Shown here in pieces: positions 572-64,000 of a stretch of 64,000 bases of DNA. Source of the stretch: Haliotis rubra. Its lineage: Eukaryota. The notes under the pieces were generated by a model. That model made no database searches. It was not told the DNA's origin and saw only the letters and a list, made by a program, of their open reading frames with translations. The position numbers and the translations under genes are program-made. Location: positions 434,001 through 498,000 of the forward strand of contig NW_025766981.1 of NCBI RefSeq assembly GCF_003918875.1, given 5' to 3'. Every line of letters starts with the position of its first letter. Positions within the stretch are counted from its first letter, which is position 1.

Positions 572-3500
572 ATGGATAACATTAAAAAGCAGGACTTAAC
601 GTCGTCCAAAGATGACAAAAGTAGTGATCAAGAAAAGCCAGTGTCTTACACTAAGGATAGAGTTGTAACCACCATCGTTCTGATGCTGTACATGAGTGCC
701 AGTATGCCTTCCGTCCCTTTGTTCACCCAATACATCCATTCTCGCTTTGAGGACTTCTACAGGAACGGCACAAACTCCTCGTCAAGATCGCCCTGTACAC
801 ATTCACCGTGTCTTCGCAACACAAGCGAAGAAGCTGATAAGTTGCAAGTGCACATTCAACAGTCCACGTCGTATGAGGTACTGAAGTTAAGCTTGTCTAT
901 TCAGGTCCCCGCTATCATCGTCAACGTAGTCGTTGGGTCCTACTCGGACCACATCGGCAGGAAGATGCTGTTTATATTGCCGCTGCTAGGATGTATTTGT
1001 AAATATGTAGGTTTCATGCTGGTTGTCAAGTTCCATCTTCATCTCAACTTCATCATCCTCGGGACTCTCCTGGACGGTTTTTCCGGTTCAACAAGCACCT
1101 TCCTTCTTGCCACCATGGCCTATGCAGCCGACGTGACGAAGACCCAAACAACCAGGACATTCGCTATAGTAATTGCCGATAGTTCGGTGGCCACCGCCTT
1201 AGCATTAGGACAGCTTATGACAGGATTCCTTATTGAGAAGCTTGGCTACTTCTACCCATCAGTCATTAATACATCTTTAATCCTTCTTGCCACAACCATC
1301 GTCATATTTTGCCTTACGGAAACAGTAAAGAAAACGGAGGTAAAGGAACTTTCGCCTGTAGTTCATTTAAAGAAAGTGTTTGGATTTTACGTCAACAAAA
1401 GCGGAGTCAATAAGCGTTTCATATTTATTGCCTCTGTGATTGTCTTTGCCCTACTAACCATTGTGAATAATGGTGTAAACTCAGTAGAGACATTGTATCA
1501 GCTGGGTCGACCCTTCTGTTGGGACCCTGAAGAGATAGGTTACTTCAGTGCTTATTCCACAGTATTCATGACCATTTGCGGACTCGTTGCCATCAAGCTT
1601 GGGTCAGCGTGCGTGAGGGTGGAGATTCTTGCTGTGACAGGGATGTTCTTACAGATGGGGTCTCTCATTCTGGAAGGCCTGGCCAGCACAGACGCCATGC
1701 TGTATTTGGGTAATATGCTATATTTGTCTTAAAAATAACTATGCAGAACTTTACAAATTGTACAATTCTTTATTCCCTAAACACATAGGTTAAAGCTCTC
1801 AGTAGAGTGTTTGCACAATTTACACTCACTTCTGTTTGTTTGTTATTTAATGCCGCACTCAGCATTATTCCAGCTATATGGCGGCGTTCTGTTAATAATC
1901 GAGTCTGAACGAGACAATCCAATGATCAACGGCATGAGCATCAATGTACGCAACCTGGATGTGTCAATCAAGTCAGCGAACCTGACCTCCCGATGCCGTT
2001 AGTCGCCTGTTACGACAAGCATGGGTTGCTGAAGACCCGGTGTTTCGCTGGTGCTACACTCACTACTTACAGAGCACGTAAACCTTGTATATTTAGGATA
2101 GGATCTCCACATGCCATGACACTTACTTTCGTCACTGGTTCTATTCCCAATTTCCTCTGGTTATCTCATACGGTTTCTCAGCACCATGCCAGTTGTTGTG
2201 GCCAGATGTCGCCACATTTCACTTCGGGCTTTCGTCTCACATAAGACTGCGTTCGTGGTCTAGTGGAGAGCGCGTCAGCCGAAGGTTAGTTGTTCGAACC
2301 TTGGATCCCTAGCATACCAAATGGTGCTGAAAGATGGTGCTTGTTGTTTCCCGGCCTGGTGCACATTCAGGGCACAAAACAAGGACTGCTCGGCCCAGTG
2401 TCAGTATACTGAGTGGGACATCCATGATACTGCAAATGGTATCTCAGAGGGCGAGCTGGCATTAAAACCTCGCATTTCGGGACTACTGCAAGCAGACAGA
2501 AATCACATCTTACCTAACCTCACCTCCCTCTCGAAGCCGCGTTACTTAAATACCACAATAGCAATCCAGGTCCTAATTTTCGTTACTGCCATTTCATGTG
2601 TATTGCTTGAGAGAAATGCCTAGATTATTGACGTTAGAGATACTTACTAACATTTTGGATAATTTAGATCAGTATTAGTAACGTGAATTCAGAAAGTTTT
2701 ATCCTGCCCCTTTTTTCGTAAAGTGTATTTGCAGAACTCTGGAAAACATATAGCTTTATAAAAATGATTTTGTGGCAATGATGGACATGTGTATGTGTAT
2801 AAATCTGGTCTCATCGCTAAATGGCTGAAATATTGCCGATGCGACGTAAAATCTCAATTCACTGAATCAAACACATATCAAATTATAATAATTTGATTAA
2901 TTTTATACTGATATTTGTATATATCTTATAATTGTATATATATTATATTTGTGTATGATTGATATTTGTTTACATTTTATATTTGTATACATTTCATAAT
3001 GTTGATAGCCTGAAGAGACTAGGTGTCATAATTTAAAGTAAATTGTTTTACGGGCATATTATTTCAGTGCCCTTTGTTGGGTCATTCAGTGGTGTGTCGG
3101 TGTCTGTGATTCGGTCGGTGATGTCGCACATGGTGGATCCTCAGGAACAAGGTATGTACTGATGGATGTGTCAATACCATAGCACATAGGACGCGGTTAT
3201 TCAAACGTTTTAAGAGCAGGTGTCCGTTCTCAATATATTCCACCATTGACCACAGTTTTACGTTGCAGGCATTATGTTCAAATATAACTCTGTAGGCCAA
3301 AAGGCAACTTTTATTGTGCATTCATTGATTTTAGAAAGGCTTTTGATTATATTGACAGGAACCAATGCTTATATTTACTCATGCAAAGAGGATGCCATGG
3401 TAAAATGCACAATCTTTTAAAAAGTATGTATGGAAATGTAAAAGCAAATGTAAAGGTTGGTTGCTCTAAAACTTCCTTCATAGCACCTCTAGTAGCGTAG

Positions 3501-4984
3501 GACAAGGGTGCGATTTGAGCCCTGTCCTGTTTATGTTCTTTATCAATGAGTTTGTGTATGTGTGGGGGCGGTTGGGTAGCGTAATTGTTAAAGCGTGTGC
3601 TCGTCACACTGATGACCTGGGTTTGATTCTCCGCATAGGTACAATGTGTGAAGCCCATTTCTGGTGTCCCCTGCCGTGATATTGCTGGAATATTGTTAGA
3701 AGCGGCGTAAAACCATACTCACTCACTATAAAAGGAGGCTGCTTGTGATCATGGTATATTTGTTATCCAAAATATTGAAGATCTAATGTTACTCTAATTG
3801 CCAATGACATTGTGCTTATATCGTATACTGTTTGGGGCTCGCAGTAACTGTTGTAAGGTGCATATTGCTGACACTGTCACTGTAGATGAACAGGTATTGT
3901 TTTAATGCAGTACTTGTACTTCCTTCGTACCAGGTGCAATCTTCTCCAGCATGGCTACCGTCGACACCCTGAGTGGAGCTATTGGGAGTGCGACCTTCAC
4001 CTTCCTGTACAGCGCAACGGTCGATACAATAAGAGGGACGGCGTTCTTAGTAATGGCGGCCGTCATTTTTATGGCCGCTGTGACTAGGTAACCTGTTCAA
4101 AAGTATATGACTGCTTGATGCGTGTGTTTGTTTTTCAATCATCTGAGCGGTGGGGTAGCCTAGTGGTTAAAGCGTTTGCTCGTCACGCCGAAGACCCAGG
4201 TTCGATACCCCGCATGGGTACCATGTGTAAAGCCCATTTCTGGTGTCCACCGCCGTGATATTTCTGGAATATTGTTAAAGGCGGCGTAGAACCAAACTCA
4301 CTATCTCACTTTCAATCATCTCTTGGAATCATCGAATTATTGTTCGAATCTCAGATTCAGTATAATACAATGGTTGACAAATTATACCTTTGATTTAAAC
4401 GAAAAGTTTTCTTTTATGTTACTATAGGTTTTCCAACGAAACAAACCGGAAGGATAAATGTTGCCTTAACCCAAGTTTCAGTTACATGTCACTTGTACTC
4501 AGTCCCATTATGACCCAACCGTTGTTAACCTCATGATGTTTCGATTAATGTCTCCTTGGCTTTCTGACAAATTATCGGGGCGGCAGTGGTTAGAGCGTTC
4601 TCTCGTTATGCCGAAGACCCAGGTTCGATTCACCAAATGGGTATTATGTATGAAACCCATTTGTGGTGTCCCCCTCCGTGATTTGCTGGAATATTACTAA
4701 AAAGCGGCGTTAAACTAAACTCACTCACTCACTCTGACAAACTGAAACTAATCATTGTTAAAAGATACATTAAAAGACTCGTCTTTTACGCTTTTTTTGT
4801 TTTCAGTGTGGTAATTGTATGGTCTCCAAAACAACCGGACTATGTCCTGCTTATTTCTCCACGTGAAGATGAAGATACACCTGGAACTGGATGTAGCCAG
4901 GAAGATACAGCTGGAACAAAATTGCTGAGAGGACCACCTCAGAAAATATATTTAACCATTAAGAAACATCCTGCTGTTGTATGA
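572..4984 (+). CDS. SLC46: SLC46-family MFS transporter (PCFT/SLC46A3-like), paralogue 1, about 517 aa
   Basis: Exons 572-1709, 3068-3151 (84 nt), 3934-4087 (154 nt), 4807-4984 (TGA). All introns are GT-AG, phases 1/1/2, and the frame stays open. Family motifs: GSYSDHIGRK (loop 2-3), YAADVT, LYQLGRPFCW, IRSVMSHMVDPQEQGAIFS. C-tail contains YVLL. Confidence 0.9.
1833..2040 (-). mobile_element. Family B element
   Basis: Reverse consensus match. Confidence 0.78.
2250..2530 (+). mobile_element. Degraded SINE family C copy
   Basis: gtggtctagtgg head, cataccaa, ggtgcttgttgtttcccggcctgg, acaaggactg, tcagtata, ggtatctcag. Confidence 0.6.
3216..3850 (+). mobile_element. Degraded LINE RT fragment in intron 2 of paralogue 1, split by a SINE
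   Basis: Translates in pieces to STIDHSFTLQAL, CAFIDFRKAFDYIDR, KSMYGNVK, GQGCDLSPVLFMFFINE. Confidence 0.75.
3564..3727 (+). mobile_element. tRNA-Asp-like SINE (family A, about 165 bp)
   Basis: Family consensus ggggcggtggggtagcctagtggttaaagcgttcgctcGTCacgccgaagacccgggttcgattcc...gcggcgtaaaactaaac(tcac)n; more than 20 copies in the window. Confidence 0.8.
4145..4309 (+). mobile_element. SINE family A
   Basis: Consensus match; TSD tttcaatcatct. Confidence 0.88.
4577..4732 (+). mobile_element. SINE family A
   Basis: Consensus match with a short head deletion. Confidence 0.8.
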
Positions 4985-10792: not shown

Positions 10793-13700
10793 ATGGACAG
10801 CGTACAAGAACAGCCTAATGTAAAGTCACAGGAAACCGCTAGTAATGTTCATGACAAACCCAAGTCTTACATCAAGGAGAGGGTCATATCAAGCGTGGTT
10901 CTGATGCTTTTCACGTGTGCCAATAACTCCTCCGTCCCTTTGTTCACCCAGTACATCCATTCTCGTTATGAGGACGTCTACAGTAACGGCACACACTCCT
11001 CGTCAATATCGACAAATAAACAATCATCGTGTCTTGCCAATGCCAGCGAGGAAGCTGTTGAGGTGGAGGTACGTGTTCAGCAGTCCACATCTTTCGAGAT
11101 CTTGAAGCTATGCCTGTGTTTTCAGATTCCCCCGGTCATCGTGAACATGGTCGTGGGGTCCTACTCGGACCACATCGGTAGGAAGCTGTTGTTTGTTTTA
11201 CCGATGCTAGGATGTACTTGTAAATATGTAGGCTTCATACTGGTAATCAAGTACCATCTTAATCTCAACTTCCTCCTCATCGGGACTCTCCTGGAGGGGT
11301 TTTCCGGTTCAACAAGCACCTTCCTCCTCGCCAACATGGCCTATGCAGCCGACGTGACGAAGACCCACGCCACCAGGACATTCGCTATAGTGATGACAGA
11401 TAGCTCGGTGTCTATCGCCATAGCATTAGGACAGGTTATGACAGGATTCCTTATTGAGAAGCTTGGCTACTTCTACCCATCAGTCATTAATACAGCTTTA
11501 ATTCTTCTTGCCACAGCCATCGTCATATTTGGCCTTACGGAAACAGTAAAGAAAACGGAGGTTAAGGAACTTTCGCCTGTAGTTCATTTAAAGAAAGTGT
11601 TCGGATTTTACGTCAACAAAAGCGGAGACAATAAGCGATCCATATTTATTGCCTCTGTGATTGTATTTGCTCTGCTGTCCATTGGACTGAATGGTAAAGG
11701 TGCGATTGAGATATTGTATCAGCTTGGTCGACCTTTCTGTTGGGATCCTGTAAAGATAGGTTACTACGGTGCCTATTCCACAGTGTTCATGACCATTAGC
11801 GGACTTGTTGCCATCAAGCTTGGGTCAGCGTGCGTGAGGGTGGAGATTCTGTCTGTAACAGGGATGTTCCTACTGATGGGGTCTCTCATTCTGCAAGGCC
11901 TGGCCAGCACAGACGCCATGCTGTATTCGGGTAATGTTAACACTTATGTCTTTATGTACATAATAATGCTCTCTAGATAATGCATGAACGCATTTCGATA
12001 ACCAATGGCTCAACAGGGAGTAGACTGTTTGATGAACACTCATTTTGCATAAATTCGCAGGAGTCGATTTAACCTTATAAAGCATACATTGGTGCAACTT
12101 GGCATTTAAACATTATAAATGTACATTTGTAGCTAGTATTAAGCAAGTAACAAAACATCATATTCACCGCAGTACGTCACTAGTCTCAGTGTAGTGTGTG
12201 ATACGTCATTGTTCCTTGCATCAACAATTGTCCTTCATGATTATGGGCACACCGGGCAAAAGAAAGTTATCACTTTTAAAGTAATTGCATAAAAAACCAA
12301 AACCCTGGTACAGGTTTGAATCCAAGCAGAAAACACTCACCGAAAACATGGTCTCGATAACAACGCATTTTTCACAACGTGGAAAACGTAGTTATGGGAC
12401 ATTGGTCCAAATGCACATGCATGATTATGGCATAAATACCGAAAATAAAAACACAACGAGCTTGCCAAGACTTACGCACGTAACGAGACAGGGCGGTCGG
12501 TATGGCCAATATGGGGGCTTCACTGCGTTAGGTGGCAAGAACTTTCAACTGCAACCAGCCCATCATCAGCAAATTGATAAACTGCTACCAGCAAACAGGC
12601 TAGACCCAAGACTGCCCAAGATAGCGAAGACCGACCGAAGACCACTATATCCGGCAGATCCGGCTCCGGAACAGATTCGTAACGGCGCCCCCGAAAGCCC
12701 AGCGATACAGGGATGAAGTGTTCAGACCTTTTGTGACAACAGCCAAGAAGAGTCATTTTGCAGCACGACAACACAAGGTCTGACACCGCCAGAATCGAGA
12801 AAACCTGCACACAGTTAATGTCAACCTACTGCTTTGGCCAGTGCTTTCTCCAGATGTGAACAATACCAGCATTACAATGAATTTTCAGTCAATATACTGG
12901 AAAATAATTTCTGTTTGTAAAATAATTATCATAAATCTCACATACGTCTTTGTTTCTAGTTTTGGGTCAAGTGAAGTCAGTGATACCTAGCCCGGTAGTT
13001 ATATTGTCATACACAACCGCCTGTGTACTGTCATACTGCGTGGTAAAAGTTTATTTGCATGAGCTTTGTCGCCCTCTTACCTGTTTGAGAGATCAGATCA
13101 TTGATTGATAATTGTACTACCTTGTTTACTTCAGTGCCTTTTGTGGCGTCCATAAGCTCCGTGTCGATACCTGTGACCCGCTCCGTTTTGTCCAGCATGG
13201 TGGAAGCTCATGAACAAGGTATGATCTAGTTCTAAGATGTCGACGGATACACATGAAAAAGTAACACAAGACAAGACAAGACAAGAATTTTATTGTATTC
13301 AAGGCCTCCGGCCCACATACAGTTTACAGAGTTATACATAAGTATTATTTTTTTTACAAGTCAATTGTAACTAATTTTTCAGCAATTCATCTACTGGAGT
13401 GTTTTATAAAAAATGACAGATTTCTAATATTTTGTTCATGGTAAGAACATAATAGTGATTTAAAAGCTACATCGGGGGTCGGGGGGGTGTGTGGCTGGGG
13501 GGTTGACAGATAATACTCTAGTATATATTTCTTTCTAAGGTCAGCATATGATTTACAGTTAAAAGTGAAGTGAATTTCGTTTTCTACTGCTTCTTTGCAT
13601 AATGGACAGATTCTTTGATTTCTCTCAATGGACGTTTTTCTTCCTTCATTTATCATCATATTTAGCAAACCTAGTCTACATTTTATAAACTTATGCCTTA

Positions 13701-16373
13701 AATCGTTGCATCTAGGTACAGATAAATATTTTTCTTGTTGTAGTAAAGTTTTAAATGTCCTTAACAATCATAGCGTGTGCTATTATTCAAACTTGATTGC
13801 CATTCCTGGTGAAACATATTAATAGCTCGATTGCGAAAATCATTAATAAATACATCAATATGACCAACAGTTTGGTTTAACCAGACATACCCATAACCGT
13901 GAGAAAACAATAAACATCTTATTCTTGATGCCCAAGTTACTTTGCCAATACTATCTAAGTGAACCAACATATTATAGGACAGTTTTGGAATGTGTTTGTT
14001 AGGCATGTTAATTATTTTAAGCCAGTATTTTAAACATCTTATCTGTGAGTTTATGTAGAGTGGGTATCTCCCGCACTCCCCATACACCCTAATCTTCGGT
14101 GTTGACGATCCAACTCCCAAAAATCTTCTACATGCTAATAAATGTATTTTTTCTAAACAATCGAAACGTTGAAATCCCCATATTTCTGAACCATATAATA
14201 AAATGGGTTGTATTTGGGCATCAAAAAGTTTAAAATATAGACCTAGTGTTAACATTCCAGTCTTGTAAATAATCGGTATTAAGTGGAAAAGAGCTTTCTT
14301 AGCGCGTAGGGAGAGATCATAAAAACTTTTTTTCATATTGAACACCGAGATACGTGTAACAATGAACTGTTTTCACAAGTTGATTACCAAGAAACAATTT
14401 ATCTTTTGGAGAAATTTGACCACCCCTCCGAAAACTAACTACATTGGTTTTATCAAGATTTACTGAGAGTTTCCAGTCCTTGGTGTAATTATCTAGAATG
14501 TTAAAATGTCTTTGTAATTCCGTCACTGTATGTGAGAGTAAAATCACATCATCTGCGAAGAGAAGCATTAACATTTCCAAGTAATCTGGAAACAGTTGAA
14601 TACCATGTTTTCCATAAACAGCAATATCATTATATAATTCACTGATAAAAAATGAAAATAGGATGGGACTGAGGATGCAACCTTGTCGCAAACCTATAGG
14701 ACAATCAAAATAGTCTGTTGTACCCGTTTCACAACGGTCACAGGACTTTATGTTTGAGTACATTTCCTTCAGCATGGAATACATTTTTTTCCCTGAGACC
14801 AGCATCTCTTAAGCAGTTCCAGAGTTTGAACCTATCAACTGTATCGAATGCTTTTTTGAAGTCTACAAATGCAACATTTAATTTATGTTTTCTACATGAT
14901 AAACATTTTTTAATAATAGCATATAAAGTGAAGATATGATCAGTCTTGGAGTAGTTTTGTCTAAACCCTGCTCGTGTTTCTGGAATTTTACCACGCATAT
15001 TTGCCCACTGGGATATCCTTTTGTTCAACATTGTTCAAATATCTTCCCTAATGGTGTGACTATACAACCGACAAAAAGTAAGAGAATTGATACTTAGTAT
15101 TATAGTGTTATGAGCCCTCTCATAAGGTCCGTAAAATTAGATCAATATCAATATCAATATCACAATAGTGGGCGACAGATGCAATGTTCCAGCTATATGG
15201 CAGCGGTTTGTAAATAATCGAGTCTGGACCATACAATCCAGTGATCAACATCATGAGCATCGATCTACGCATTAGGGATACGATGAAATGTGTTACCCAA
15301 GTCAGCGAGCCTGACTACCTGATCCCGTTAGTCGCCTTTTACGACAAGCATGGATTGCCTTCATCTGTGAAGGTCTGGATTGGAATTGGTCATGAGCAAC
15401 CCATGCTTTTCGTAAGAGGTGATTAACGGGTTCTGGTGGTCAGATTCGCTGACTTGGTTAACACATGTCATCGTATCCCAGTTGTGTAAATCGATGCTCA
15501 TACTGTTGATCACTGGATTGTCTGGTCCAGACTCGATTATTTACAGACAGCTGTCATTTAACTTGAACATTGCTGAGTGCCTCCATTAAACAAACAACCA
15601 ACCATCAACCAACCTCTTCACCAGTATATGTCGACATTTTGGCTGATTGTCGAGATTCTCTCTCGAAGGCATTTTTAAGTGTGCGCTCGGCCCTTGCACT
15701 AGTGATTGTGAGTTCCACAATAGATGTTGATGCTGTTGCTGTTGATGCCTGTGCTAACACATATTTCTCATGCACTAGGTGCTATCTTCTCCAGCATGGC
15801 TACCGTCGAAACCCTGTGTGGAGCTATAGGGAGTACGGCCTTCGTCTCTCTGTACAGAGCCACAGTGGGTACCATGAGAGGAATGACGTTCCTTGTTATC
15901 GCGGCCGTCGTGTTCATGGCCGCCATAATGAAAATGTATGTAACCCACAACCGTGACATTTTTAATGAAACATGTATCAAAATATCCAGTTAAAAAATAT
16001 ATTATAATAACTCCGTGGTCAATCAATACTGGTTTGTTTGGGTTTATTTCAAAAAGTATGACTCTTATCTGAGGTACTATTCAAAGAGCTTATTTTGCCA
16101 GGATCTGCAATAAGTCGTAATTTCAGGTTGTCTTCAAATGCTTCGAATACCACTTTTACACTCTATGAGTAAACACGAGTAATTATCTAAGCAGATTTGA
16201 CGTTATTGTAACACTTACGCTACATCTTCTTTTCTAGCGTGGTAATTGTGAAGTCCCCCAGGCAACCGAGCTATGACATCTTTCAGTCGCCACCAGAAGA
16301 TCAGAAGGCGCAAACTCCTGACCACAACCAATATGGAACAATTCCGAAAGGAGAAAACAATACACCATGCTAA
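10793..16373 (+). CDS. SLC46: SLC46-family MFS transporter, paralogue 2, about 504 aa
   Basis: Exons 10793-11930, 13135-13218, 15779-15935, 16238-16373 (TAA). GT-AG introns with the same phases as paralogue 1. Motifs SDHIGRK, YAADVT, PFCW, EQGAIFS. Tail has YDIF and YGTI. Confidence 0.92.
13266..15051 (-). mobile_element. 5'-truncated non-LTR retrotransposon (RTE-X-like LINE) in intron 2 of paralogue 2
   Basis: Frameshifted RT: AGFRQNYSKTDHIF, FVDFKKAFDTVDR, GLRQGCILSPILF, LLFADD, YTYLGV; C-terminal CPLC...EIHF..NC. The 3' end on - is AATAAA followed by (TCTTG)n. Clade assignment is inference. Confidence 0.88.
15185..15612. mobile_element. Two family B elements head-to-head (15185-15357 on -, 15364-15612 on +)
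   Basis: Consensus matches in opposite orientations. Confidence 0.82.
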
Positions 16374-19982: not shown

Positions 19983-20200
19983 GGCTCTATACAAAAAGAT
20001 GAAGGTCGAACTCCCCATAGCTCCACACAGGGTTTCGACGGTAGCCATGCTGGAGAATCTTTCGCACCTAGTGCATGAGAAATATGTGTTAGCACAGCAA
20101 CAGCATCAGCATCTATTGTGGAACTCACAATCACTAGTGCAAGGGCCGAGCGCACACTTAAGGATCTCGACAATCAGCCAAAATGTCGACATATAAGTGA
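19983..20200 (-). pseudogene. Inverted SLC46 exon-3 fragment with its upstream intron
   Basis: Reverse complement matches 15615-15860 (intron end plus MATVETLCGAMGS...LYRA). A 2-nt insertion follows the acceptor, and the exon is truncated. Confidence 0.85.
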
Positions 20201-23767: not shown

Positions 23768-24451
23768 TTTGTATCTCACTACGTGAGTGTGTGTGCAATA
23801 TGGGCTTGGTTGACTACATTCCAAACACACAACTCTCAGGATTTTTGCGACTATACCAAATGCATTAACGATATTTAGCTATTTAGAGTTTAGGTGAAAT
23901 CAGCAATATTGCACTTGTATAACCTGTAGAAAGTATGCATGCCCTTCTATCCATCAAGAACACTTATTCAATTTCAGCAGATTTTGAATGACTATGTACT
24001 TACAATGTCAAAAAAAAAGAAGTAGTGTTTATCAGCCTAAACTTTAAACTGATGACCCCGACTTTACTTAGGAATTGACTGTTTAATACTCTGTGAGAAA
24101 GGCGGGTTAACGTACTCACATGTGGATGGAAACATATTATAATATACCGAATCGTTTCCTTTAAACATGACACAACCGCATAGTCAATAGATGATAACAA
24201 ATAAAGGTTCCAAACGTAACCTCAATGCACATAAACGACTGGGGCATTGTACACACATGTATTTTTACCTTCACACAGAAATCCCCATAAACCCATGTAA
24301 CTTTAAACACCAATGGCAGTTTAACAGTGCGTCGGTTAGGACTGCATTCAAGAATACTTAGCACTGGAAACTTCAGTAGTCCTGCTTGCCATAACCAATG
24401 AAATAAATGCTCATTTCTGTCAATATGGAATCTCCTGGACAGGTTTTGCAA

Positions 24452-25110
24452 GTAACAGCGAGGAAGCTGATGAGATGGAAGTGCTTGTTCAGCAGTCCAC
24501 GTCTTCCGAGATCCTGAAGCTATGCCTGTGTTTTTCAGATTCCCCCCGGTCATCGTGAACATGGTCGTGGGGTCCTACTCGGACCACATCGGCAGGAAGA
24601 TGCTGTTTGTTTACCGATTCTAGGATGTATTTGTAAATATGTATGTTTAATACTGGTTGTCAAGTTCCATCTTCATCTCAACTTCCTCATCCTCGGGACC
24701 CTCCTGGAGGGGTTATCCGGTTTAACAAGCACCTTCCTTCTTGCCAACATGGTCTATGCAGCCGACGTGACGAAGACCCACGCTACCAGGACATTCGCTA
24801 TAGTGATGACAGATAGCTCGGTGTCTATCGCCATAGCATTAGGACAGGTTATGACAGGATTCCTTATTGAGAAGCTTGGCTACTTCTGCCGATCAGCATA
24901 GGCGGATCCAGAGAGGGGGTGTAGGGAGGCGCACACCCTACCCCGTTTTGTCCTGAAAGTTTATTAAATGACCACTGAAACTCTCGTGAAAACGGGTGAA
25001 ATGAACTGTGCATCCCCCTTACTGAACTTAGCATCCCCTATTTTTTCTCAAAAGTTGTATCCGCCCCTGCATCAGTCATTAATACAGTTTTAATCCTTCT
25101 TGCTACAACC
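24452..25110 (+). pseudogene. SLC46 exon-1 internal fragment, frameshifted and split by a MITE
   Basis: Aligns by eye to exon 1 of paralogues 1-3 from NSEEADE to ILLATT. Has indels (tgtttttcag, gtttaccgattc), a MITE at about 24896-25070, no start codon and no splice donor. Confidence 0.85.
24896..25070. mobile_element. MITE with (g)ca(t/g)(a/g)ggcggat TIRs inserted in the SLC46 pseudo-exon
   Basis: The intact paralogues give the empty site cccatcagtc; 4-6 bp are duplicated (atca/catcag). A second copy is at 32188-32353. Confidence 0.75.
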
Positions 25111-28213: not shown

Positions 28214-31200
28214 ATGGACAGCGTACAAGAAGAGCCTAATGTAACGTCAAATGGAAACCCTAGTCATATTCAAGACAAACCCAAGTCTTACATCAAGGAG
28301 AGGATCATATCAAGCGTGGTTCTGATGTTGTATATGTGTGCCAATGTCTCCTCCGTCCCCGTGTTCACCCAGTACATCCATTCCCGCTATGAGGACGTCT
28401 ACAGTAACGGCACAAACTCCTCGTCAACATCGCCAAATAAACAATCACCGTGTCTCGCTAATAACAGCGAGGAAGCTGATGAGGTGCAGGTGCTTGTTCA
28501 GCAGTCCACGTCTTTCGAGATCTTGAAACTCAGTTTGTGTGTTCAGATTCCCCCGGTCATCGTCAACATGGTCGTGGGGTCTTACTCGGACCACATCGGC
28601 AGGAAGCTGTTGTTTGTTTCGCCGCTGCTAGGATGTATTTGTAAATATGTAGTTTTCATACTGGTTGTCAAGTTCCATCTTCATCTCAACTTCCTCATCC
28701 TCGGGACTCTTCTAGAGGGCTTTTCCGGTTCATCGAGCACCTTCGTTCTTGCCAACATGGCCTATGCAGCCGACGTGACTAAGACCCACGCCACCAGAAC
28801 ATTTGCGATAGTAATTGCCGATAGTTCGGTGTCTATCGCCATAGCATTAGGACAGGTTATGACAGGATTCCTTATTGAGAAGCTTGGCTACTTCTACCCA
28901 TCAGTCATTAATACAGCTTTAATCCTTCTTGCCACAACCATCGTCATATTTTGCCTTACGGAAACAGTAAAGAAAACGGAGGTAAAGGAACTTTCGCCTG
29001 TAGTTCATTTAAAGAAAGTGTTCGGATTTTACGTCAACAAAAGCCGAGGCAATAAGCGTTGCATATTTATTGCCTGTTTGGCGGTTTATGCTCTGATGAG
29101 CGTTGGGTTTAATGGTAAATATACGATTGAGACATTGTATCAGCTGGGTCGACCCTTCTGTTGGAATCCTGTAAAGATAGGTTACTATGGTGCCTATTCC
29201 ACAGTATTCATGACCATTAGCGGACTCGTTGCCATCAAGCTTGGGTCAGCGTGCGTGAGGGTGGAGATTCTTGCTGTAACAGGGATGTTCTTACTGATGG
29301 GGTCTCTCATTCTGGAAGGCCTGGCCAGCACAGACGCCATGCTGTATTCGGGTAATATGAGCATTTATGTCTTTATGTATATAATAAAAAAATTCTAGAT
29401 ACTGCATCTACGCACCCAAATAATCTCCACAGCGAATAGAGTATTTAATGAACTCTCATTTTGGATGCACTCATAGGACAAATTTGTAACTACTACTGAG
29501 CAAGTAAACCCTGCTTCATATTAACCGGAGTACTATGCCCAGTGTAGTGACTTGTCATTGTTCCATGACTTGACGTCATCAAATTTTCCTTCATGATTAT
29601 TGCAAACATATTTGTGATTTTTCGGGTCAATTCGTCATTTCCTTTCCTGAAAGCATATGATAGCAGTGTTGAACCTGGTACTACGCACATAATGTTTCGT
29701 TCCATGAGTGAAAAGTAATAATGACATGCATGCTGAAGGAATCCTAAATCTCCTGCTGCCTTTTGAATCTTCTAATGTTCATTGGAATGGGGCGGTGGGT
29801 AGCCTAGTGTTGAAAGCGTTCCCTCGTCACGTCGAAGACCCGGTTTCGATTCCACAAAAGGGTACAATGTGTGAAGCCCATTCTGGTGTCCCTAGCCATG
29901 ATATTGCTGGAATATTGCTAAAAGCGACGTAAAACTAAACTCACTCACTCCATCGAAACTTTAGCATGACATTACATGCTAATGTCCACAGACGGCACCT
30001 CACAAGATTATTGACAATGACAATAAATTGTACTTAACTAGCTACACTAGTCACCTATCAAAATTCAGTTTACAACATGTGGACCCAAGCAACCAATGCT
30101 TCGAGTAAGAGGAGGTTAAATGGATCCGGAGAGGGAGAGGTAGCTGGAGAGGGTCGATGTTGGGGTTCGGGGAGGTTGTTCCAGCTTCGGAAATTTCTTT
30201 GGAAACCTTCAGAAGAATACGTAGAAAAACATGTCAAAACATGACGCTTTACGGTCGCGTACCTTCCAACCATATTGTCATACACAGCCGTCTGTGTGCT
30301 GTCATAGTGCGTTGATTTCATTTGCATGACCTTTGTCGCCCTCTTACCTGTTTGAGAGATCATTGATTGATGCTTCTACTACCTTGTTTCCTTCAGTGCC
30401 TTTAGTGGCGTCCATAAGCGCCGTGTCGGTACCTGTGACCCGCTCCGTCTTATCCCGCATGGTGGCTGCTCATGAACAAGGTATGACCTTTAGATCTAGG
30501 ATGTCGACGGAAACACATGATCAATTAAAACGTGGTGACTACACAGTCGACAAAAAGTAAGAGAACTGATGAAATGATAGACTTAGTGAAGATGTCATGA
30601 TGACAAATGTCTGTAAAATATATTGCGGGCATGTGGATCAATATTTGCTGTGTCAACCATAGTCGGTGACAGGTGTATGAGTTCTTGGTGTCACACTGCT
30701 GAATAACGTTTTCCCTTAGTGTTGCCTCTCATAGCACCTGAAGAGCTACCTCGAGATGGTGGCGTGCACTTTCAACCAGAGAACATCCTAAAGATGCGCT
30801 GTATCAGGGACACCTCAGGGAACCAGGGCCTAGATTTTCGAAGCTCTCTTAGATAGTCGTAAGTTAATGTCAATGTATGGCACTTACGACTATCTTATCG
30901 CTAAGAGAGCTTCGAAAATCTAGGCCCAGCCCATTTGTCTTCTCTTCGGAGAAAATAGGTGCCGAAATGGCCAGGAGTTATCTGGCGTTGTTATCGTACA
31001 GTTGGAAATTTCTGGCAATAATTTTCGCGAGTTGGAACAATATCGTCAACATATTGCCTCAACCCAAATTCTGTCTCGAAGGCATTTTTAAGAGTGCGCT
31101 CGGCCTATTTGGACTAGGGTTTGTGAGTTCCATAACAGATGTTGTTGTTGATAGCTTAAACTAACGCTTAGTCTCTAATATACATGATATTGACAGAAAC

Positions 31201-44687: not shown

Positions 44688-44827
44688 NNNNNNNNNNNNN
44701 NNNNNNNNNNNNNNNNNNNNNNNNNNNNNNNNNNNNNNNNNNNNNNNNNNNNNNNNNNNNNNNNNNNNNNNNNNNNNNNNNNNNNNNNNNNNNNNNNNNN
44801 NNNNNNNNNNNNNNNNNNNNNNNNNNN
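44688..44827. other. Assembly gap
   Basis: Run of N. Confidence 1.
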
Positions 44828-49790: not shown

Positions 49791-49989
49791 NNNNNNNNNN
49801 NNNNNNNNNNNNNNNNNNNNNNNNNNNNNNNNNNNNNNNNNNNNNNNNNNNNNNNNNNNNNNNNNNNNNNNNNNNNNNNNNNNNNNNNNNNNNNNNNNNN
49901 NNNNNNNNNNNNNNNNNNNNNNNNNNNNNNNNNNNNNNNNNNNNNNNNNNNNNNNNNNNNNNNNNNNNNNNNNNNNNNNNNNNNNNNNN
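49791..49989. other. Assembly gap
   Basis: Run of N. Confidence 1.
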
Positions 49990-51314: not shown

Positions 51315-54300
51315 ATGGAGACGAGTCTAACAATATCGAAAGAACATAAAAAGGTCAGTACCATTTTCGGAGGGGTGATGGTTTCTGTGATCTTGACACT
51401 TTACACGTGCGCCGTCATGGCAGGGGTGCCACTTCAGAGCCAGTACGTGAGGCACAGACTCCTGCAAGAGTACACGAACACCAGTAACGCCAGCGACATC
51501 TTCGCCTCATCGTGCGACAACGACACCGTACAGGACATGGACATCCTACAGATGGTTCAGGAGGACACTGCTCGCCGACTCCTCTACTTCTCCCTCAGTG
51601 GCAGCATCCCGTCAATTCTCGTGAATCTCGTGTTTGGCTCGTATTCCGATTTCTTGGGAAGGAAGATTCTGTTCCTTTTACCTCTATGTGGAGACCTGTT
51701 GAAGAACATTCTTTCCGCTTTGATAATACGATATAATTGGAGTTTAACATTATTTTATGCGGGCAGCGTAGTTGGAGGATTTTGTGGATCTTTCACTACG
51801 ATTCTTCTCGCCTGTTTCTCTTACACTGCTGATATTACACCTCCACAGAAATCCCGTACAATCGCTATAGCTTTGTTAGAAACAGTTCTGGCTGTGGCAT
51901 CTTCTGCAGGGTCTCTAGTCACCGGATACCTTATCAGCTCCCTAGGGTACTTCTACCCCTCGCTCATGATCGCCATCCTCCTCGCCGTCGACGTACTCAT
52001 CGTCATATTCCTGCTGCCGGAGACGCTTAAGAATGTCGAGCACATTATTATATCGCCAATTGTACATCTGAAAAAGTGTTTCGGATTTTACACGATATAC
52101 GGGAGCGGTTTAAAGCGGATTAAATACAACGTGTGCATGGTCATCTTGTTCTTTGGCGTCATTAGCCTGATCGGACGGACGTCCATAGAAACCCTGTATC
52201 AGCTGGACTTGCCGTTCTGCTGGAACTCCGTGAAGATAGGATACTACGGCGCCCTGCGTATTGTTATCCAGTCCATATGTAGTGTCCTGGCCATCAAGAT
52301 GCTCCAGCCTTGCCTCCGGGACGAAATCATCGCCATCATCGGGATGCTGTTTGGGGCGGCCTCTCTAGCCATGGAAGCGTTTGCGACAACAGATTGGATG
52401 ATGTATATAGGTAAACACTTATAAATCTGTATAACTATAACCCACCAATGATGAGTAGTTTGCGTGGACATTAGATTGTTGTCATGTAGACCCGTGAAGA
52501 TCCGGGTTAGAATTGGTCTTCAGCAACCCTTGTCGTAAGAGGCGACTAGCGTGATCGGGCTGTCAGGCTCGGTGACCTGGTGACACATATCATCGTATCC
52601 CAGTTTAGATCGGTGACCATGCTGTTGATCACTGGATTGCCTGCTGCAGACTCGATTGTTTACAGACCGCCGCCATACAGCTGGAATGTTGCTAAGCGTG
52701 GCGTTAAACAGCAAGCAAACAAAACATTGTAATGCAACTTTGGGGGCCGGGGTAGCCTAGTGGTTAAAGCGTTTGCTCGTGACGCCGAAGACTTGGTTCG
52801 ATTCCCCACATAAGTACACTGTGAAGCCTTTTCTAGTGTCCCCCGCCTAGATATTGCTGAAATATTGCAAAAAGCTCCCTCACTTCAGTTAGGCGTGACT
52901 TAATGACAGTATGTTTAACATGAATTAATATACTTTTATCGGTGATCACAAACACAGGGACCCGTGAAGATCCGGGTTAGAATTGATCTTCAGTAACCCA
53001 TGCTTGTCGTAAGAGGCGAATATCGGGTGGTCAGGCTCACTGACTTGGTTGACACATGTAATCGTATCCACGGAGGTATCCAATATCAACAAAATCTTGT
53101 GGTCGCCTTGAGGCCGAAGGGAAATATAATAACGGGCGATAAATGTTAAGCCCACAGGAGGTAACTCTATCACGATTATTTACAGACTGCCGTCATATAG
53201 CTAGAATATTGTCTCAGTGGGGCGTAAAACTAAACTCACTCACTTTTCTGTGTTGCAGTGCCTGTTGTGGGAATCTGTGCCTACACAACCGTTCCGATAT
53301 TCAGAGCCATCATGTCACGCATGACGTCACCGAAAGAACAAGGTAAGCCATGACGCTGAGACCATTCGGTTTGTTGTGTTGTTTACGGAAAGGGTCGAAT
53401 GGTGGCGAATGGGATGGGTGTTGACTAACGTCTCTCTCTCTTTATTTATATATATTGATAAAATAGTTCCTTTTAAATTGAAAAGGAGCCAGTGAGACGA
53501 CATATCCTGAAATGAGGTAATCTAAACTACAGATAACTGGTCTACAGTCTTTGTGAAATCCAAACATGGAACTATTTTGTCGACTGTCGAAGAAGGTGTG
53601 AGTAGTAAGACGGATGACGTCACTCAAAACCGTTGTGCTGTGTATTAATGCTCCTCCATGGTAATAAGGATGGAGATGATCTGTGCTGAAATGGTGTGCC
53701 TTTATAGGATATAAACAGATTACTTCACTCGTGCAGTAATGTTTAAGTACTTGTGCAGTAATGTTCACAGTATATAATTACTAATCGATATGTTCAAAAC
53801 ATTTACTTTTGTTATATTTTTATCCCCCCGGCATGTAATGCGGGGGGATATAGTCGTCGCCTCGTCCGTCCGTCCGTCCGTCCGTCCGTCCGTAATCATT
53901 TTGTTTCCGGAACTCCAAGAACATTCGATATTTTTCAACCAAAAATTGTAGATATATCAAACAGAACCTAAGGTGGTGCCTTTTGCTATTTACAGATTTT
54001 TGGCATTTTTGTTTTTCTCAGTTTCCATGGAAACGTTTTGGACTTAGTCTTAAAGGGAGGGGCAGGCTTCGTTTCCGGAGCATAACTCAGAAACCGTTCA
54101 GTATTTTTCTGCAAAACTTGGTAGATATATCAAACAGAACCTAAAGTGGTGCCTTTTGCTATTTACAGATTTGTGTGATTTATTATTTTCTTGGTTTCCA
54201 TGGAAACGATTCGGACTTAGTCTCAAAAAGGAATGGTGGGTTTCGTTTCCGGAGCACAATTCGAAAACTTCTTAATATCTTTCAGCAAGCTTGGCAGATA

Positions 54301-59123: not shown

Positions 59124-62100
59124 CTACTGCTGCTCCTCATCAGAGGCATCCTCTTCATCACGCCCTTGTACACAGAGGGTGTTCTGGGGTGACACTGCTA
59201 TCGACCGAGTCTTGAACACAAATACTCTGAAAATGAATGGACGTGATCATTTAACCATTTCGAGGGGCGGTGGGGTAGCCTAGTGGTCAAAGCGTTCGCT
59301 CGTCACGGGTACAATGTGTAAAGCCCATTTTATGTGTCCCCCGCCGTGATATTGCTGAAATATTGCTAAAAGCGGCGTAAAACTAAACTTACTCAAAACA
59401 CAAATTTAACCATTTTGAGAGTCACAAACATTATCCCTTATTCTGTCTGATTGATTCTTGAAATACACCTTTATCACCAAACATTTTTATGATGCGTTAT
59501 TTGTTTTGCGCAAATATATAGCTGCGGTCTGTCAATAATTGAGTCTGGACCAGACCATCCGGCGCTTATATTTAACCATCGTCAAACACGAGTATGTACT
59601 TTCTTTCGCCCGTTTGGTTCAAGTGTAAACCAGAAAGTTCGAACACCTGCAGTACTTACGTCAACAATATAATGGCTACGATTTTGGTGGCCGCCATTAT
59701 GAGAAACACTGCACCGCGCATGACGCTCAGCGTTGCTTCATAGACGACGTTGAGTGAGGTAGACCCGACAGCATCACAGACAGCCTCCACCACAGACATA
59801 CTTGTAAATATGGCACCTACAACAAATTGTCACCTCAATTAACCATTAAACTGAGAGAACCGATTTCTCAGAACACACAAGTGGATTGTTTGCTTTTTAA
59901 TGCCGCATTCAGCAATATTCTACCTATACGGCAGCGGTCTGTAAATATTCGAGTCTGAACCAGAGAGTCCTGTGACGAGCATCATGAGCATGACATGTGT
60001 CAACCAAGTCAGCGAACCTGACAACCCGATCCCGTTAGTCGCCCATACGATAAGCATGGGTTGCTGAAGATCAACTGTAACCCGGACCTTCACGTGTTAC
60101 CCTATACGTGACAAAGTCAACTTAGCATCAACTGATGTGAATGTCGTTAGAAACCTGGCTATGCATATCTATTGTGCAAATTCTTTCAGGGTGACTCATG
60201 TCGATTAATTATATATCAAATTGTCAGAAATGCTAAATGACCACCTGTTGGAACATGTGCCGCAGTCCTACATTCTCCACGAATAAAGACATATCTATCT
60301 AAGCTATATATGAACGTCAGACATCGTTCTACTTTTGAAAATATGCCATGCACATTTAACTGGTTTTTAACAAGATGTTGGCGAACATACTTACCCTGCT
60401 CGTCGGCTGGTACCATTCTAGACAGGATAGCCCGTAATGCTGGTGAGATAGCTGATGAAGCTAAACCCACAACCGGAACTGATACCCGGAAAGAAAGAGT
60501 GAACTGAAGGTAAGTGTAACGTGACAATTGGTAGGTTACATATGTTTAGGTATAAACGTATTTTCTAAATGAGTTATGTACCAATTTACCATGTTCCATC
60601 CTGTTCCTATAGTTTCAATGTTCGGCGTTAATTAAGAACCAGATTTGATACCATGAGTGGAGGGACAATAACAAGGGCAATATATAATACAGAGGATAAT
60701 TGGCTTTTCTTGTCAAATGTATTTCGTCTCGTGACCCGACACAATAACATATTTATCACATCTCGTGACCCGACAAGATAACACATTTATTTAATCTCTT
60801 GACCTGAAAGAAAAGTTTTTTTCATGCGTGCTGCAATGCAAATGTCAGTTGATTCATATCACGAGTTTATTCATATCTTACCGATCTTCATGACCTAAAT
60901 ATTATAACCATTTTGTCTTTGAATTGTGACTGAAAGTTGTAATTTCACTGGAATTCGATATGAATGTTAACGTTTCAGATAAATACAGTATGTCATCACT
61001 AAATGCATAATTAACATAACTACCACTATTTTGGAATATATTTTTAAAGACCCTGGCACTGTTTGGTAGCCCAAAGCTGTAAAATGACTGACATTCATAG
61101 CGAATTTAATTTAAAATCATCAAGTAAAGAATATGATATAAAAGTGATCTAGTGAGTTCTGATTTACGTGACTTTAAGCACTTTTCAGTAATATAATCAC
61201 AAGGGGTGGGTGATTATTATTTTACGCCTCTTTTAACAATATTGCAGCAATATCACGGCGGGGGGGGGACACCGGAAATGATACCCATGTGGGGAATCGA
61301 ACCCGGGTCTTCGGCGTTACAAGCCGCCTCATTATAACAAGGATAACACATGTGGAGTATCGAACCCAGCCTTCGGCGTGACGAGTCAATACCTTAATAA
61401 GTAGGCTACCTTATAACACATAGCACCCACCTAAGTACAACATCCAGTCCACGAAAGCAAGGCCTTGTACAATTTTAGATGCAGCTGCAGACATGAAGCC
61501 GATGATACCAACTATACCGTCCGTGGTGCAGACGTGGAGGGCCTTAATGATGACGACACTGCTGAAGTAGTAGACGCCGTACTTCAGGGCACCGTACAGT
61601 CCCAGTTTGACAGAGTCCCAGCAAAAGGGCGGACTCAGCATGTACAAGTTCTCGATATTTACTGTGCCATGCTCGTCTATCATCTTAAACAAGAAAACGC
61701 TTATACAGATCCAGAATAGGGCACGGTTACCTGTAGCCCCTTTTCTAAAATAAAAACCAAACACATTTTTACGGCCGCAATGGGAGAGATACAGGCCCTA
61801 TTTCTTTTGACCGTTTCCGGAAGCAGGGTCACCACGACAAGGAGGTCCAGCATTGTCAAGGCAGCCATCCCCACAGACGGATACAGGTAGCCGTTAATCT
61901 GAATCAAATACCCAGTGGCTATGTGTAGAGATATCTCAGCGATACCCCTGGCTGCATCCACCACAGCCAGTGCCACGGTTCTCACTTTAGCAGGTGGGGT
62001 AATGTCTGCCGTGAACGCGTACCCCGCTAGGTAGAAGGTGAAGCTAGACCCACACAATCCGTCAGCGCCGTACCCGATGAAGAAATAGCGAAGGTCCAGA

Positions 62101-62582
62101 TTCCATGCGATGGTAGCAACTGTCGTGAGGTCTCTGGTGATTCTCCCCACCAACATGGTCATGAACAAGAACCGGCGTCCGAAATAGTCCGAATAGGCTC
62201 CAAGAAATAGGTTGGTGAAGATAGCAGGGATGCTTGTAGCGAGGGTGAGCTGCATGTTGAGGTTGGTCGCATCTCTCTGGACCTCATCCTGGAGGTCGGA
62301 GTCCGCTGCGGTGTTGTTGACAACACATTGACCGTGAGACGTCTTCCTTTCCGGATACGTTGAGTTTGGAAAGTACTGTTGGCTGTATCGCAGGTATAGG
62401 TACTGGGACATGAGTGGACTGTGGATAGCAGAGGAGCCGCCATGGAGGAACAGGATGAGGCTGACGAGGAGCAGGCGGCCGATTTGGGTGGTCTGGTGGT
62501 TTCCAGGAACAATGTTCTGGTCGCCGACATCTTTAATGAGTGGTTCTGTCTCACGTCCTTGGTTGATGTTTTCGTCCTCCAT
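59124..62582 (-). CDS. SLC46: SLC46-family MFS transporter, paralogue 5 (divergent, convergent orientation), about 498 aa if the 1-bp frameshift is corrected
   Basis: Exons 62582-61431, 60478-60395, 59816-59660, 59226-59124 (TAG). Motifs GAYSDYFGRR, FTADIT, LYMLSPPFCW, LRAILSRMVPADEQGAIFT. The two provided ORFs (293 aa and 117 aa) join if the A5 run at 61766-61770 is A6. Confidence 0.82.
59262..59395 (+). mobile_element. SINE family A (B box deleted)
   Basis: Flanked by atttaaccattt duplication. Confidence 0.8.
59884..60096 (-). mobile_element. Family B element
   Basis: Reverse consensus match. Confidence 0.78.
61205..61410 (-). mobile_element. SINE family A fragments
   Basis: One degraded copy plus a second head fragment. 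Confidence 0.7.
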
Positions 62583-63272: not shown

Positions 63273-64000
63273 TACTAGCCACATAAAGAAACTGTGCATT
63301 GTCAAAATATTATCCCAGTCGATAAGTACGATAACAATGTCAAAGGTACATATAAACTTTAATGGAGGGATCATGAGACCATAACAAGTCATCGGGGAGA
63401 ATTGGACTCATCTGTAAAACAACATTTATCCACATAAACAAGGGTCTGCGGACATGATTTCGGCACCACATTCGGCGAGCTTGTCGATGACGTTGTGTCA
63501 GGATAGGCCGTATGGCGGGACGTCGTGGTCTGATCCCGTGATGACGTAAACGTTGTCGAACAGTGTTGGGGTGGATACGGCGAAGTCCTGGGATGGTTCG
63601 GGCAGTCATCACTGCAGTCTGAAACCTGTGGCGCAGATTGGTCACCCTTATCCATCTGTCCTGTCTTGGCGTTGTTACACGTGGACGTCCAGAACGTGTT
63701 CGATCGATGACGTCATTTGTGTTCTGGTAGCGTCTCACCAGTGCAGAAATGGTGTGCCGGTGGCAGTGGAAATGTGCAGCCACTTTTCGTTGAGACATCC
63801 CCCACGGACCATCCCAATGGCCTCATGACGTTGTGCAGACGTGAGCCTTGGCATGCTATGCGTTTCAATAGCCGTTTAATTTTTTGAACGATCGCAAGGG
63901 CAGGGGTTGAGCTTTCCAAAGTGACAGTATTGTGTGGCATTCATTTGCTCTGTTTCTCTTGCCCGGAATGCACGTGCAACAACGTATTGCACGTCTCAAG
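63273..64000 (-). mobile_element. Internally deleted Tc1 element running off the window
   Basis: TIR tactagccacataaagaaactgtgca after TA. N-terminal HTH region (SQRKVAAHF...RSGRPRVTT) continues to FTDES; the rest of the catalytic domain is missing. Confidence 0.85.

What the first reader, a model, noticed from the sequence alone, without database searches (positions are those of the whole stretch)
1430..1545. Hypervariable TM7 island between two homogenised tracts
The segment before LYQL reads LTIVNNGVNSVET (1), LSIGLNGKGAIEI (2), MSVGFNGKYTIET (3), GVISLIGRTSIET (4) and KMIDEHGTVNIEN (5), while the flanks in 1-3 are almost invariant. It aligns to the TM7 region holding H281 of human PCFT, which lines the transport pathway. 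TM1 (SASMPS / CANNSS / CANVSS) varies likewise. Inference: the scaffold is homogenised while pocket residues escape, the signature of diversifying selection on specificity.
Basis: partly seen in the sequence, partly recalled or inferred. Interest (0 to 1): 0.7.

Follow-up and report, generated by a model that had tools for sequence, protein, structure and literature searches.

The report
Unconverted TM7 island in abalone SLC46 paralogues
In a tandem cluster of abalone SLC46A3-like transporter genes, gene conversion keeps half of the first exon nearly identical between copies, but a roughly 60-base stretch of transmembrane helix 7 keeps each copy's own old sequence; this is a known kind of pattern that marks likely function-defining residues, not proof of ongoing diversifying selection.

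Summary
The window is Haliotis rubra and carries five SLC46A3-like MFS transporter genes. Among copies 1-3, 29 of 58 bases vary at 1434-1491, against 6-9% in the flanks at 1190-1433 and 1492-1705 (0 of 100,000 permutations). Synonymous divergence in the flanks is 0.04-0.20. In the island it is 0.25-0.56, the same as in the unconverted 5' half. With orthologues from three other Haliotis species, the 5' half and the island group by paralogue type and the flanks group by species. So the flanks are homogenised by interlocus gene conversion after speciation, and the island escapes in three lineages. A profile alignment to chicken PCFT (E 2e-117) places residue 299 at human H281. Positions 296, 299, 300 and 302 match pathway-accessible PCFT residues. 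The diversifying-selection reading is only weakly supported. Island omega is 0.64-0.78, higher than the rest at 0.40, but not above 1. A site test is significant only on the island alone (p 0.017) and vanishes over the whole exon. The copy-3 motif has the same amino acids in H. rubra and H. asinina. The best reading is a peak of divergence kept by selection against homogenisation, as in primate L/M opsins. The scan noted the conversion before (s1-333146). Copy 5 is frameshifted.

The parts
572..1708 (+). Copy 1, exon 1 (TM1-TM9) of an SLC46A3-like MFS transporter; donor GT at 1709
   Evidence: ORF and Pfam MFS_1 match. 100% identical to NCBI H. rubra protein P0004.
1190..1433 (+). Homogenised tract A (TM6, the TM6-7 loop and the start of TM7)
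   Evidence: 15 of 244 sites vary among copies 1-3. dS is 0.04-0.08 for codons 207-277. Conversion run between copies 1 and 3 at 1275-1372, P<2e-4.
1434..1491 (+). Core of the divergence island (TM7, codons 288-307; residue 299 aligns with human PCFT H281)
   Evidence: 29 of 58 sites vary. For the codon partition 278-307: dS 0.25-0.56 and a tree that groups by paralogue type. Alignment to 7bc6.
1493..1522 (+). LYQLGRPFCW motif at the TM7/TM8 junction, conserved across the SLC46 family
   Evidence: Column entropy is 0-1.3 bits at most positions across 97 distant homologues; P314 and C316 are invariant.
1523..1552 (+). Small second cluster of copy-1-specific codons (DPEEIGYFS against DPVKIGYYG/NPVKIGYYG); EE is shared with H. 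asinina copy 1
   Evidence: Variable-site map and alignment.
1553..1708 (+). Homogenised tract B (TM8-TM9), which ends at the exon/intron border
   Evidence: Identity 93-98% in windows 1552-1701; it falls to about 35-50% in the intron. dS is 0.08-0.20 for codons 308-378.
3067..3153 (+). Copy 1, exon 2
   Evidence: tblastn of P0004, 100% identity.
3933..4088 (+). Copy 1, exon 3
   Evidence: tblastn of P0004, 100% identity. Donor AG|GTAACC at 4088/4089.
10793..11929 (+). Copy 2, exon 1; its island core lies at 11655-11712
28214..29350 (+). Copy 3, exon 1; its island core lies at 29076-29133
51315..52409 (+). Copy 4, exon 1 (41% identical to copy 1; takes no part in the homogenisation)
61430..62582 (-). 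Copy 5, exon 1, split over two reading frames by a one-base frame change at the A5 run 61765-61769; the end coordinate 61430 is approximate
   Evidence: Three-frame translation.

Best explanation
Copies 1-3 are old tandem paralogues of an SLC46A3-like, PCFT-related MFS transporter. They were triplicated before H. rubra and H. asinina split. Interlocus gene conversion repeatedly homogenises the 3' half of exon 1 (TM6 to TM9) within each species. A stretch of about 60-90 bases that encodes the middle and outer part of TM7 is not overwritten. It keeps each paralogue's ancestral sequence and has gone on accumulating both synonymous and non-synonymous differences. Because the same stretch is spared in three lineages, the most likely cause is selection against conversion tracts that would erase paralogue-specific TM7 residues. 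This is a 'peak of divergence' under gene conversion. By homology with PCFT, these residues (296, 299, 300, 302-304) sit on the cavity- and gate-lining helix and probably set substrate or gating differences between the copies. Conversion of the flanks, the age of the island and its escape are shown here. The location in the transport pathway is inferred from homology. Selection as the cause, and an effect on specificity, are inferred.
For: Identity of the genes: P0001, P0003 and P0004 are 100% H. rubra 'solute carrier family 46 member 3-like' proteins. Chicken PCFT 7bc6 matches at E 3.6e-47 with a single sequence and 2.4e-117 with a profile. The AlphaFold2 model has mean pLDDT 87.9 with TM7 as helix 276-311, and its best Foldseek hit is 7bc6 at E 1.5e-18. 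Conversion: dS between H. rubra paralogues is 0.27-0.49 in codons 1-206, 0.04-0.08 in 207-277, 0.25-0.56 in 278-307 and 0.08-0.20 in 308-378. Flank dS between orthologues is higher, at 0.09-0.26 for rubra against asinina and 0.48-0.66 for rubra against rufescens. Trees of the 5' half and of the island group by paralogue type, for example rubra with asinina copy 3 at 95/95 and 95/98. Trees of the flanks place the three rubra copies together. A rubra-only clade is rejected for the island (p-AU 0.0009) and for the 5' half (6e-6). The island alignment rejects the flank tree (p-AU 6e-7) and the flank alignment rejects the 5' tree (0.046). Runs of agreement are significant for rubra copies 1/3 at 1275-1372, rufescens copies 1/3 at 1140-1246 and asinina copies 1/2c, each with P<2e-4. 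Paralogues within a species share species-specific residues in the flanks. Parallelism: the same dip in paralogue identity at 1409-1498 occurs in H. asinina (0.58-0.73 against 0.83-0.93) and in H. rufescens and H. cracherodii (0.77-0.88 against 0.90-1.00). Conservation within a paralogue: the copy-3 island has the same amino acids in rubra and asinina, and it is the longest run of agreement between those orthologues. [quoted passage not shown] Many of the variable residues are polar or charged (N, K, Y, T, S, H), which is not expected of a lipid-facing surface. Theory and precedent: the peak-of-divergence signature is described in PMC3924837.
Against: No test here separates selection against conversion from a passive barrier set up by local sequence mismatch. 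The flank topology is only weakly resolved: the rubra clade has support 54/65, and single orthologue clades in the flanks are not individually rejected (p-AU 0.05-0.24). No coordinates of the model were available, so the orientation of the side chains rests on homology and on residue chemistry. The island coincides with the part of TM7 that is most variable across the whole family (3.2-3.75 bits), which would also fit low constraint. No RNA evidence for expression was found. The regions were defined after the data had been seen.
Confidence: 0.68

Rival explanations
1. Ongoing diversifying (positive) selection drives rapid amino-acid turnover at TM7 pocket residues.
For: Island omega is about twice that of the rest of the exon (0.78 against 0.40, LRT p 0.005). 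On the island alone, M2a beats M1a (2dL 8.1, p 0.017), with omega 2.3 at about a third of codons, including 296, 299, 302 and 303. The copy-1 and copy-2 islands differ between rubra and asinina, with pairwise omega of 0.54 and 1.69.
Against: Island omega stays below 1 (0.64). The whole-exon partitioned M2a model gains nothing over M1a (2dL 0.2). The window was chosen after the fact for its high variability, which biases the island-only test. Other windows have equal or higher pN/pS: codons 60-94 at 0.82-0.88 and the N-terminal tail at 0.60. The copy-3 motif has the same amino acids in rubra and asinina and is identical between rufescens and cracherodii. High dS in the island shows age, not speed.
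Confidence: 0.15
2. A passive mismatch barrier with relaxed constraint. The segment diverged early because it is weakly constrained, and conversion tracts now stop at it because the mismatch density is too high. No selection for distinct functions is involved.
For: The island coincides with the most variable TM7 columns across 97 distant homologues. Omega is not significantly below 1 (p 0.06). Conversion depends on sequence identity (stated in PMC3966223, abstract).
Against: It does not explain how a 58-base patch first diverged inside a converting tract. It does not explain why the copy-3 motif is more conserved between species than its own flanks (identity 0.95-0.98 against 0.88-0.92). The sparing recurs in three lineages.
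Confidence: 0.14
3. The flanks are alike through strong purifying constraint on protein and codons, without gene conversion, or the pattern is an assembly chimera.
For: LYQLGRPFCW and some flank motifs are conserved across the family.
Against: Synonymous sites in the flanks diverge freely between species (dS up to 0.66) but not between paralogues within a species. Paralogues share species-specific residues in the flanks. The same pattern is seen in four independent assemblies. A contig of public run X1 spans 1351-1516 with no differences, though it may come from the same sample as the assembly.
Confidence: 0.03

Closest known systems
Peak of divergence in duplicated genes under interlocus gene conversion (Innan 2003; Teshima and Innan 2008; primate L/M opsin exon 5), as reviewed in PMC3924837 and shown for gibbon opsins in PMC3213168
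   Same: Tandem paralogues older than the species split. Low divergence is maintained by conversion. A short internal segment has high divergence that includes linked synonymous sites, and it lies over residues known or inferred to define function.
   Different: There are three paralogues, and the pattern recurs in at least three Haliotis lineages. The function of the spared residues is only inferred by homology. Introns are not homogenised here, whereas in the opsin case they are (PMC3924837).
[quoted passage not shown]
   Same: 12-TM MFS fold, 27% identity, the TM2-3 loop motif D-x-x-G-R, the TM10 arginine (human R376), and the LYxLxxP(F/L)CW junction after TM7. TM7 is a cavity and gate helix.
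   Different: The folate and proton-coupling residues are not kept. Human R148 is T, D156 is S, H281 is N, L or F, F282 is N, S or I, and Y315 is not conserved; E185 is D. It is therefore not a PCFT orthologue and probably not a folate carrier.
Vertebrate SLC46A3 and SLC46A2 (the source name given is lysosomal steroid-conjugate/bile-acid symporter; cGAMP and muropeptide importers are described in papers listed)
   Same: NCBI names the abalone proteins SLC46A3-like. They belong to the same family.
   Different: One-to-one orthology was not tested here, and no substrate is known for any mollusc member. The abalone genes form a lineage-specific tandem expansion.

Membership tests
SLC46 family of MFS transporters | 12-helix MFS fold | tested here: met
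   Pfam MFS_1 at E 1e-10 to 1e-16. AlphaFold2 model with pLDDT 87.9 and a 12-TM helix pattern. Foldseek top hit 7bc6 with TM-score 0.83 on the target.
SLC46 family of MFS transporters | Significant sequence similarity to a solved SLC46 member | tested here: met
   7bc6_A at E 3.6e-47 over residues 40-457. Profile search at E 2.4e-117.
SLC46 family of MFS transporters | TM2-3 loop D-x-x-G-R motif (human D109, G112, R113) and TM10 arginine (human R376) | tested here: met
   GSYSDHIGRK aligns with chicken GPWSDSVGRR, and R395 aligns with chicken R384. D126 and R130 are at least 90% conserved in alignment A2.
PCFT (SLC46A1) folate transporter orthologue | Substrate and proton-coupling residues R148, D156, H281, F282 and Y315 (human numbering) | tested here: not met
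   The aligned residues are T165, S173, N/L/F299 and N300, and no Tyr is conserved at the Y315 position. Residue roles come from PMC8978580.
Peak of divergence under interlocus gene conversion | Duplication older than speciation | tested here: met
   The 5'-half tree pairs rubra and asinina orthologues at 95-100% support. A rubra-only clade is rejected at p-AU 6e-6.
Peak of divergence under interlocus gene conversion | Flanks evolve in concert within species | tested here: met
   Flank dS between paralogues is lower than between orthologues. Topologies are incongruent by AU tests. Run tests give P<2e-4. Support for the flank clades themselves is weak (54/65).
Peak of divergence under interlocus gene conversion | Local peak that includes synonymous sites and matches the divergence of unconverted regions | tested here: met
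   Island dS is 0.25-0.56 against 0.27-0.49 in the 5' half. Clustering of variable sites has P<1e-5.
Peak of divergence under interlocus gene conversion | The peak lies over residues whose difference is functionally selected | not testable with these tools
   Only homology is available: positions 296, 299, 300 and 302 correspond to hPCFT residues identified by SCAM. No transport or population data exist.
Diversifying (positive) selection | dN/dS above 1 for the region or for a class of sites, robust to recombination | tested here: inconclusive
   Region omega is 0.64-0.78. The island-only M2a test gives p 0.017, but the whole-exon partitioned M2a equals M1a. The data are 12 sequences analysed with my own script.

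The most novel reading that the evidence does not exclude
The spared TM7 residues (296, 299, 300, 302, 303), perhaps together with the paralogue-specific TM1 patch (residues 42-47), are the substrate-specificity code of SLC46A3-like carriers. Selection has kept them apart in parallel in several abalone lineages because the copies import different ligands, for instance microbial or dietary small molecules of the kinds that vertebrate and fly SLC46 proteins carry. The conversion-escape map would then be a natural mutagenesis screen that points to the specificity determinants of a poorly understood transporter family.
Probability: 0.3. Interest if true: 0.6.

Novelty: new member of a known kind. 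Interest (0 to 1): 0.4.

Why it matters
The SLC46 family has members whose substrates are still debated, among them folates, steroid conjugates, cyclic dinucleotides and muropeptides. Only PCFT appeared as a solved structure in the searches of the Protein Data Bank here. A segment that resists homogenisation in three abalone lineages names a short list of TM7 positions to test as specificity or gating determinants. It also adds a clean invertebrate example of the peak-of-divergence signature, replicated across lineages, which has mostly been documented in vertebrate opsins and immune genes. It does not reveal a new mechanism.

Tried and rejected
(1) I looked for polarity coupling between residue 299 (the H281 position) and residue 361 (the position of chicken N350, the hydrogen-bond partner of H289). 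Within Haliotis the pairs are N-Q in copy 1 and L-L or F-L in copies 2 and 3. Across 107 family members there is no association (Fisher p 0.43), so I dropped it.

(2) A whole-exon site model with region-specific trees found no class with omega above 1.

(3) Public reads were uninformative. All runs were short Logan contigs. There was no RNA holder, the introns are swamped by repeats, and no usable allele or expression information emerged. One contig does match 1351-1516 exactly.

(4) The two single-sequence HMMER alignments disagreed by one residue in the TM7 register. The profile alignment settled this in favour of the ungapped register.

(5) A donor for the island among copies 4 and 5 was considered and rejected. 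Their motifs are unrelated, and the island groups with orthologues.

(6) A tRNA scan of the window found nothing.

(7) A literature search found no paper that mentions both SLC46 and Haliotis.

The N runs at 44688-44827 and 49791-49989 were left untouched.

Full report
**What is there.** The window is Haliotis rubra. Three encoded proteins are 100% identical to NCBI H. rubra proteins named 'solute carrier family 46 member 3-like'. Five paralogous genes are present. Their large first exons lie at 572-1708, 10793-11929, 28214-29350 and 51315-52409 on the + strand, and at about 62582-61430 on the - strand. Each first exon matches Pfam MFS_1 and chicken PCFT 7bc6 (E 1e-32 for exon 1, 3.6e-47 for the full-length protein, 2.4e-117 with a 108-sequence profile). 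An AlphaFold2 model of copy 3 has mean pLDDT 87.9. Its best structural match is 7bc6 (E 1.5e-18, target TM-score 0.83), and TM7 is a continuous helix from 276 to 311.

**The observation.** All five quoted segments are at the stated places. Among copies 1-3, nucleotide identity is 93-100% at 1192-1431 and 1552-1701 and drops to 60-70% at 1432-1491. Variable sites per base are 0.27 in 572-1189, 0.06 in 1190-1433, 0.50 in 1434-1491 and 0.09 in 1492-1705. The cluster of 29 variable sites in 58 bases was never reached in 100,000 permutations. Copy 5's segment is read in a different frame from its start codon, because of a one-base frame change at an A5 run at 61765-61769. The TM1 strings are as quoted, but they lie in the generally diverged 5' half.

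**Homogenisation of the flanks.** I used Nei-Gojobori estimates on four partitions: codons 1-206, 207-277, 278-307 and 308-378. For the three H. rubra paralogue pairs, dS is 0.27-0.49, 0.04-0.08, 0.25-0.56 and 0.08-0.20 respectively. I fetched exon 1 of nine related genes from H. asinina, H. cracherodii and H. rufescens. Flank dS between orthologues is 0.09-0.26 for rubra against asinina and 0.48-0.66 for rubra against rufescens, which exceeds the flank dS between paralogues within a species. Purifying selection therefore cannot explain the similarity of the flanks.

Trees of the 5' half and of the island pair rubra with asinina orthologues, with support of 95-100 and 83-95 respectively. In the flank tree the three rubra copies are each other's nearest neighbours, at 96-97% identity. 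A rubra-only clade is rejected for the island (p-AU 0.0009) and for the 5' half (6e-6), yet it is the best topology for the flanks, with weak support of 54/65. The island alignment rejects the flank tree (p-AU 6e-7) and the flank alignment rejects the 5' tree (0.046). Sawyer-type run tests find significant shared tracts between paralogues, each with P<2e-4: rubra copies 1/3 at 1275-1372, rufescens copies 1/3 at 1140-1246 and asinina copies 1/2c at 1108-1168. Exons 2-4 and the introns are not homogenised.

**The island is old and specific to each paralogue.** The same dip in paralogue identity is seen in H. asinina and in H. rufescens and H. cracherodii. The copy-3 motif has the same amino acids in rubra and asinina and differs at two residues of the 13-residue motif in the Pacific species. 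The copy-2 motif is similar across species. The copy-1 motif has changed more. The longest run of agreement between rubra and asinina copy 3 is the island itself, at 1446-1519.

**Selection tests.** I wrote a Goldman-Yang type codon likelihood script and used region-specific trees with 12 sequences. M0 omega is 0.39 for the 5' half, 0.49 for tract A, 0.64 for the island and 0.37 for tract B. Omega of 1 is not rejected for the island (2dL 3.5). With shared frequencies, island omega is 0.78 against 0.40 for the rest (p 0.005).

On the island alone, M2a beats M1a (p 0.017) with omega 2.3 at 36% of codons: 278, 279, 283, 288, 295, 296, 299, 302 and 303. In the whole-exon partitioned analysis, however, M2a equals M1a. 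Sliding windows show equal or higher pN/pS elsewhere in the gene: 0.82-0.88 at codons 60-94 and 0.60 at the N-terminus. The island window was chosen for its variability, so the island-only result is biased upward. Elevated omega is therefore supported. Omega above 1 is not.

**Position in the protein.** The profile alignment is ungapped through TM7. It places abalone residue 299 at chicken H289 (human H281) and residue 300 at F290 (human F282), so the human number is the abalone number minus 18. A review of PCFT (PMC8978580) makes four relevant points:
- His289 hydrogen-bonds Asn350 and is protonated during gating.
- Phe290 stacks on pemetrexed.
- TMs 1, 2, 7 and 8 form the extracellular gate.

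These SCAM positions correspond to abalone 296, 299, 300, 301, 302, 304 and 306. Of these, 296, 299, 300, 302 and 304 vary between paralogues. Many variable residues are polar or charged. The residues that bind folate and couple protons in PCFT are not conserved, so these are not folate carriers of the PCFT type. The same TM7 columns are the most variable of the helix across 97 distant homologues, at 3.2-3.75 bits. That fits either specificity tuning or low constraint.

**Interpretation.** The pattern matches the 'peak of divergence' expected when selection preserves a difference between duplicates that undergo gene conversion. This signature is described for primate L/M opsins (PMC3924837; PMC3213168). 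Conversion and escape are shown here. Selection against homogenisation is inferred from the parallel sparing in three lineages and from the conservation of the copy-3 motif. An effect on specificity is inferred by homology. A passive barrier caused by sequence mismatch remains possible.

**Limits.** No model coordinates were available, so side-chain orientation was not computed. There are no RNA or population data. The analysis rests on 12 sequences from four species. Regions and groups were named after the data had been seen. The codon models are my own implementation, checked only against pairwise estimates.

Noticed in passing
window 61765-61769 (- strand): Copy 5's first exon changes reading frame at an A5 run. 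The ORF from the ATG ends at a stop codon at 61701-61703, and the TM7-TM9 part continues in another frame. This is either a pseudogene or a homopolymer assembly error.
   Followed up: partly
window 24445-24895 (+) and 19983-20057 (-): Relic fragments of a further SLC46-like copy lie between copies 2 and 3. One is a piece of exon 1 (residues about 81-230, 64-89% identical, with frame breaks). The other is an exon-3-like piece on the opposite strand.
   Followed up: no
window 4086-4091 and about 4790-4960: The NCBI model for copy 1 (459 aa) ends by reading into the intron (AGG TAA). The site is also a good donor (AG|GTAACC). An ORF downstream resembles the C-terminal tail of the H. asinina orthologue, so copy 1 probably has an unannotated last exon.
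   Followed up: partly
window 1652-1654 (codon 361): This is one of the few copy-1-specific codons inside homogenised tract B. It is Q in rubra and asinina copy 1 and L in rubra copies 2 and 3 and asinina copy 3, though two asinina copy-2 genes also have Q. It aligns with chicken PCFT N350, the partner of H289. Family-wide coupling with residue 299 was not supported.
   Followed up: yes
window 14320-14805 (-), 63343-63798 (-), 42213-42659 (-): Transposable-element remnants. A reverse-transcriptase fragment (RVT_1, E 2e-17) lies inside copy 2's second intron. A Tc1/mariner-type transposase HTH (HTH_Tnp_Tc3_2, E 2.5e-8) lies at 63343-63798, and a weaker HTH ORF lies at 42213-42659.
   Followed up: partly
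window about 1838-2171, 2673-3006, 3508-3841, 4009-4342, 4510-4843: Intron segments of copy 1 that attract contig depths of 1e4 to 1e6 in every abalone run laid on them, so they are highly repeated SINE-like elements. ARAGORN calls no tRNA in the window.
   Followed up: no
L001, L004, L005 (H. asinina): The H. asinina cluster holds more genes of this group than H. rubra: five exon-1 copies were used here (one copy-1 type, three copy-2 types and one copy-3 type), and the gene table lists a further 498-residue gene. Copy number therefore differs between species.
   Followed up: partly
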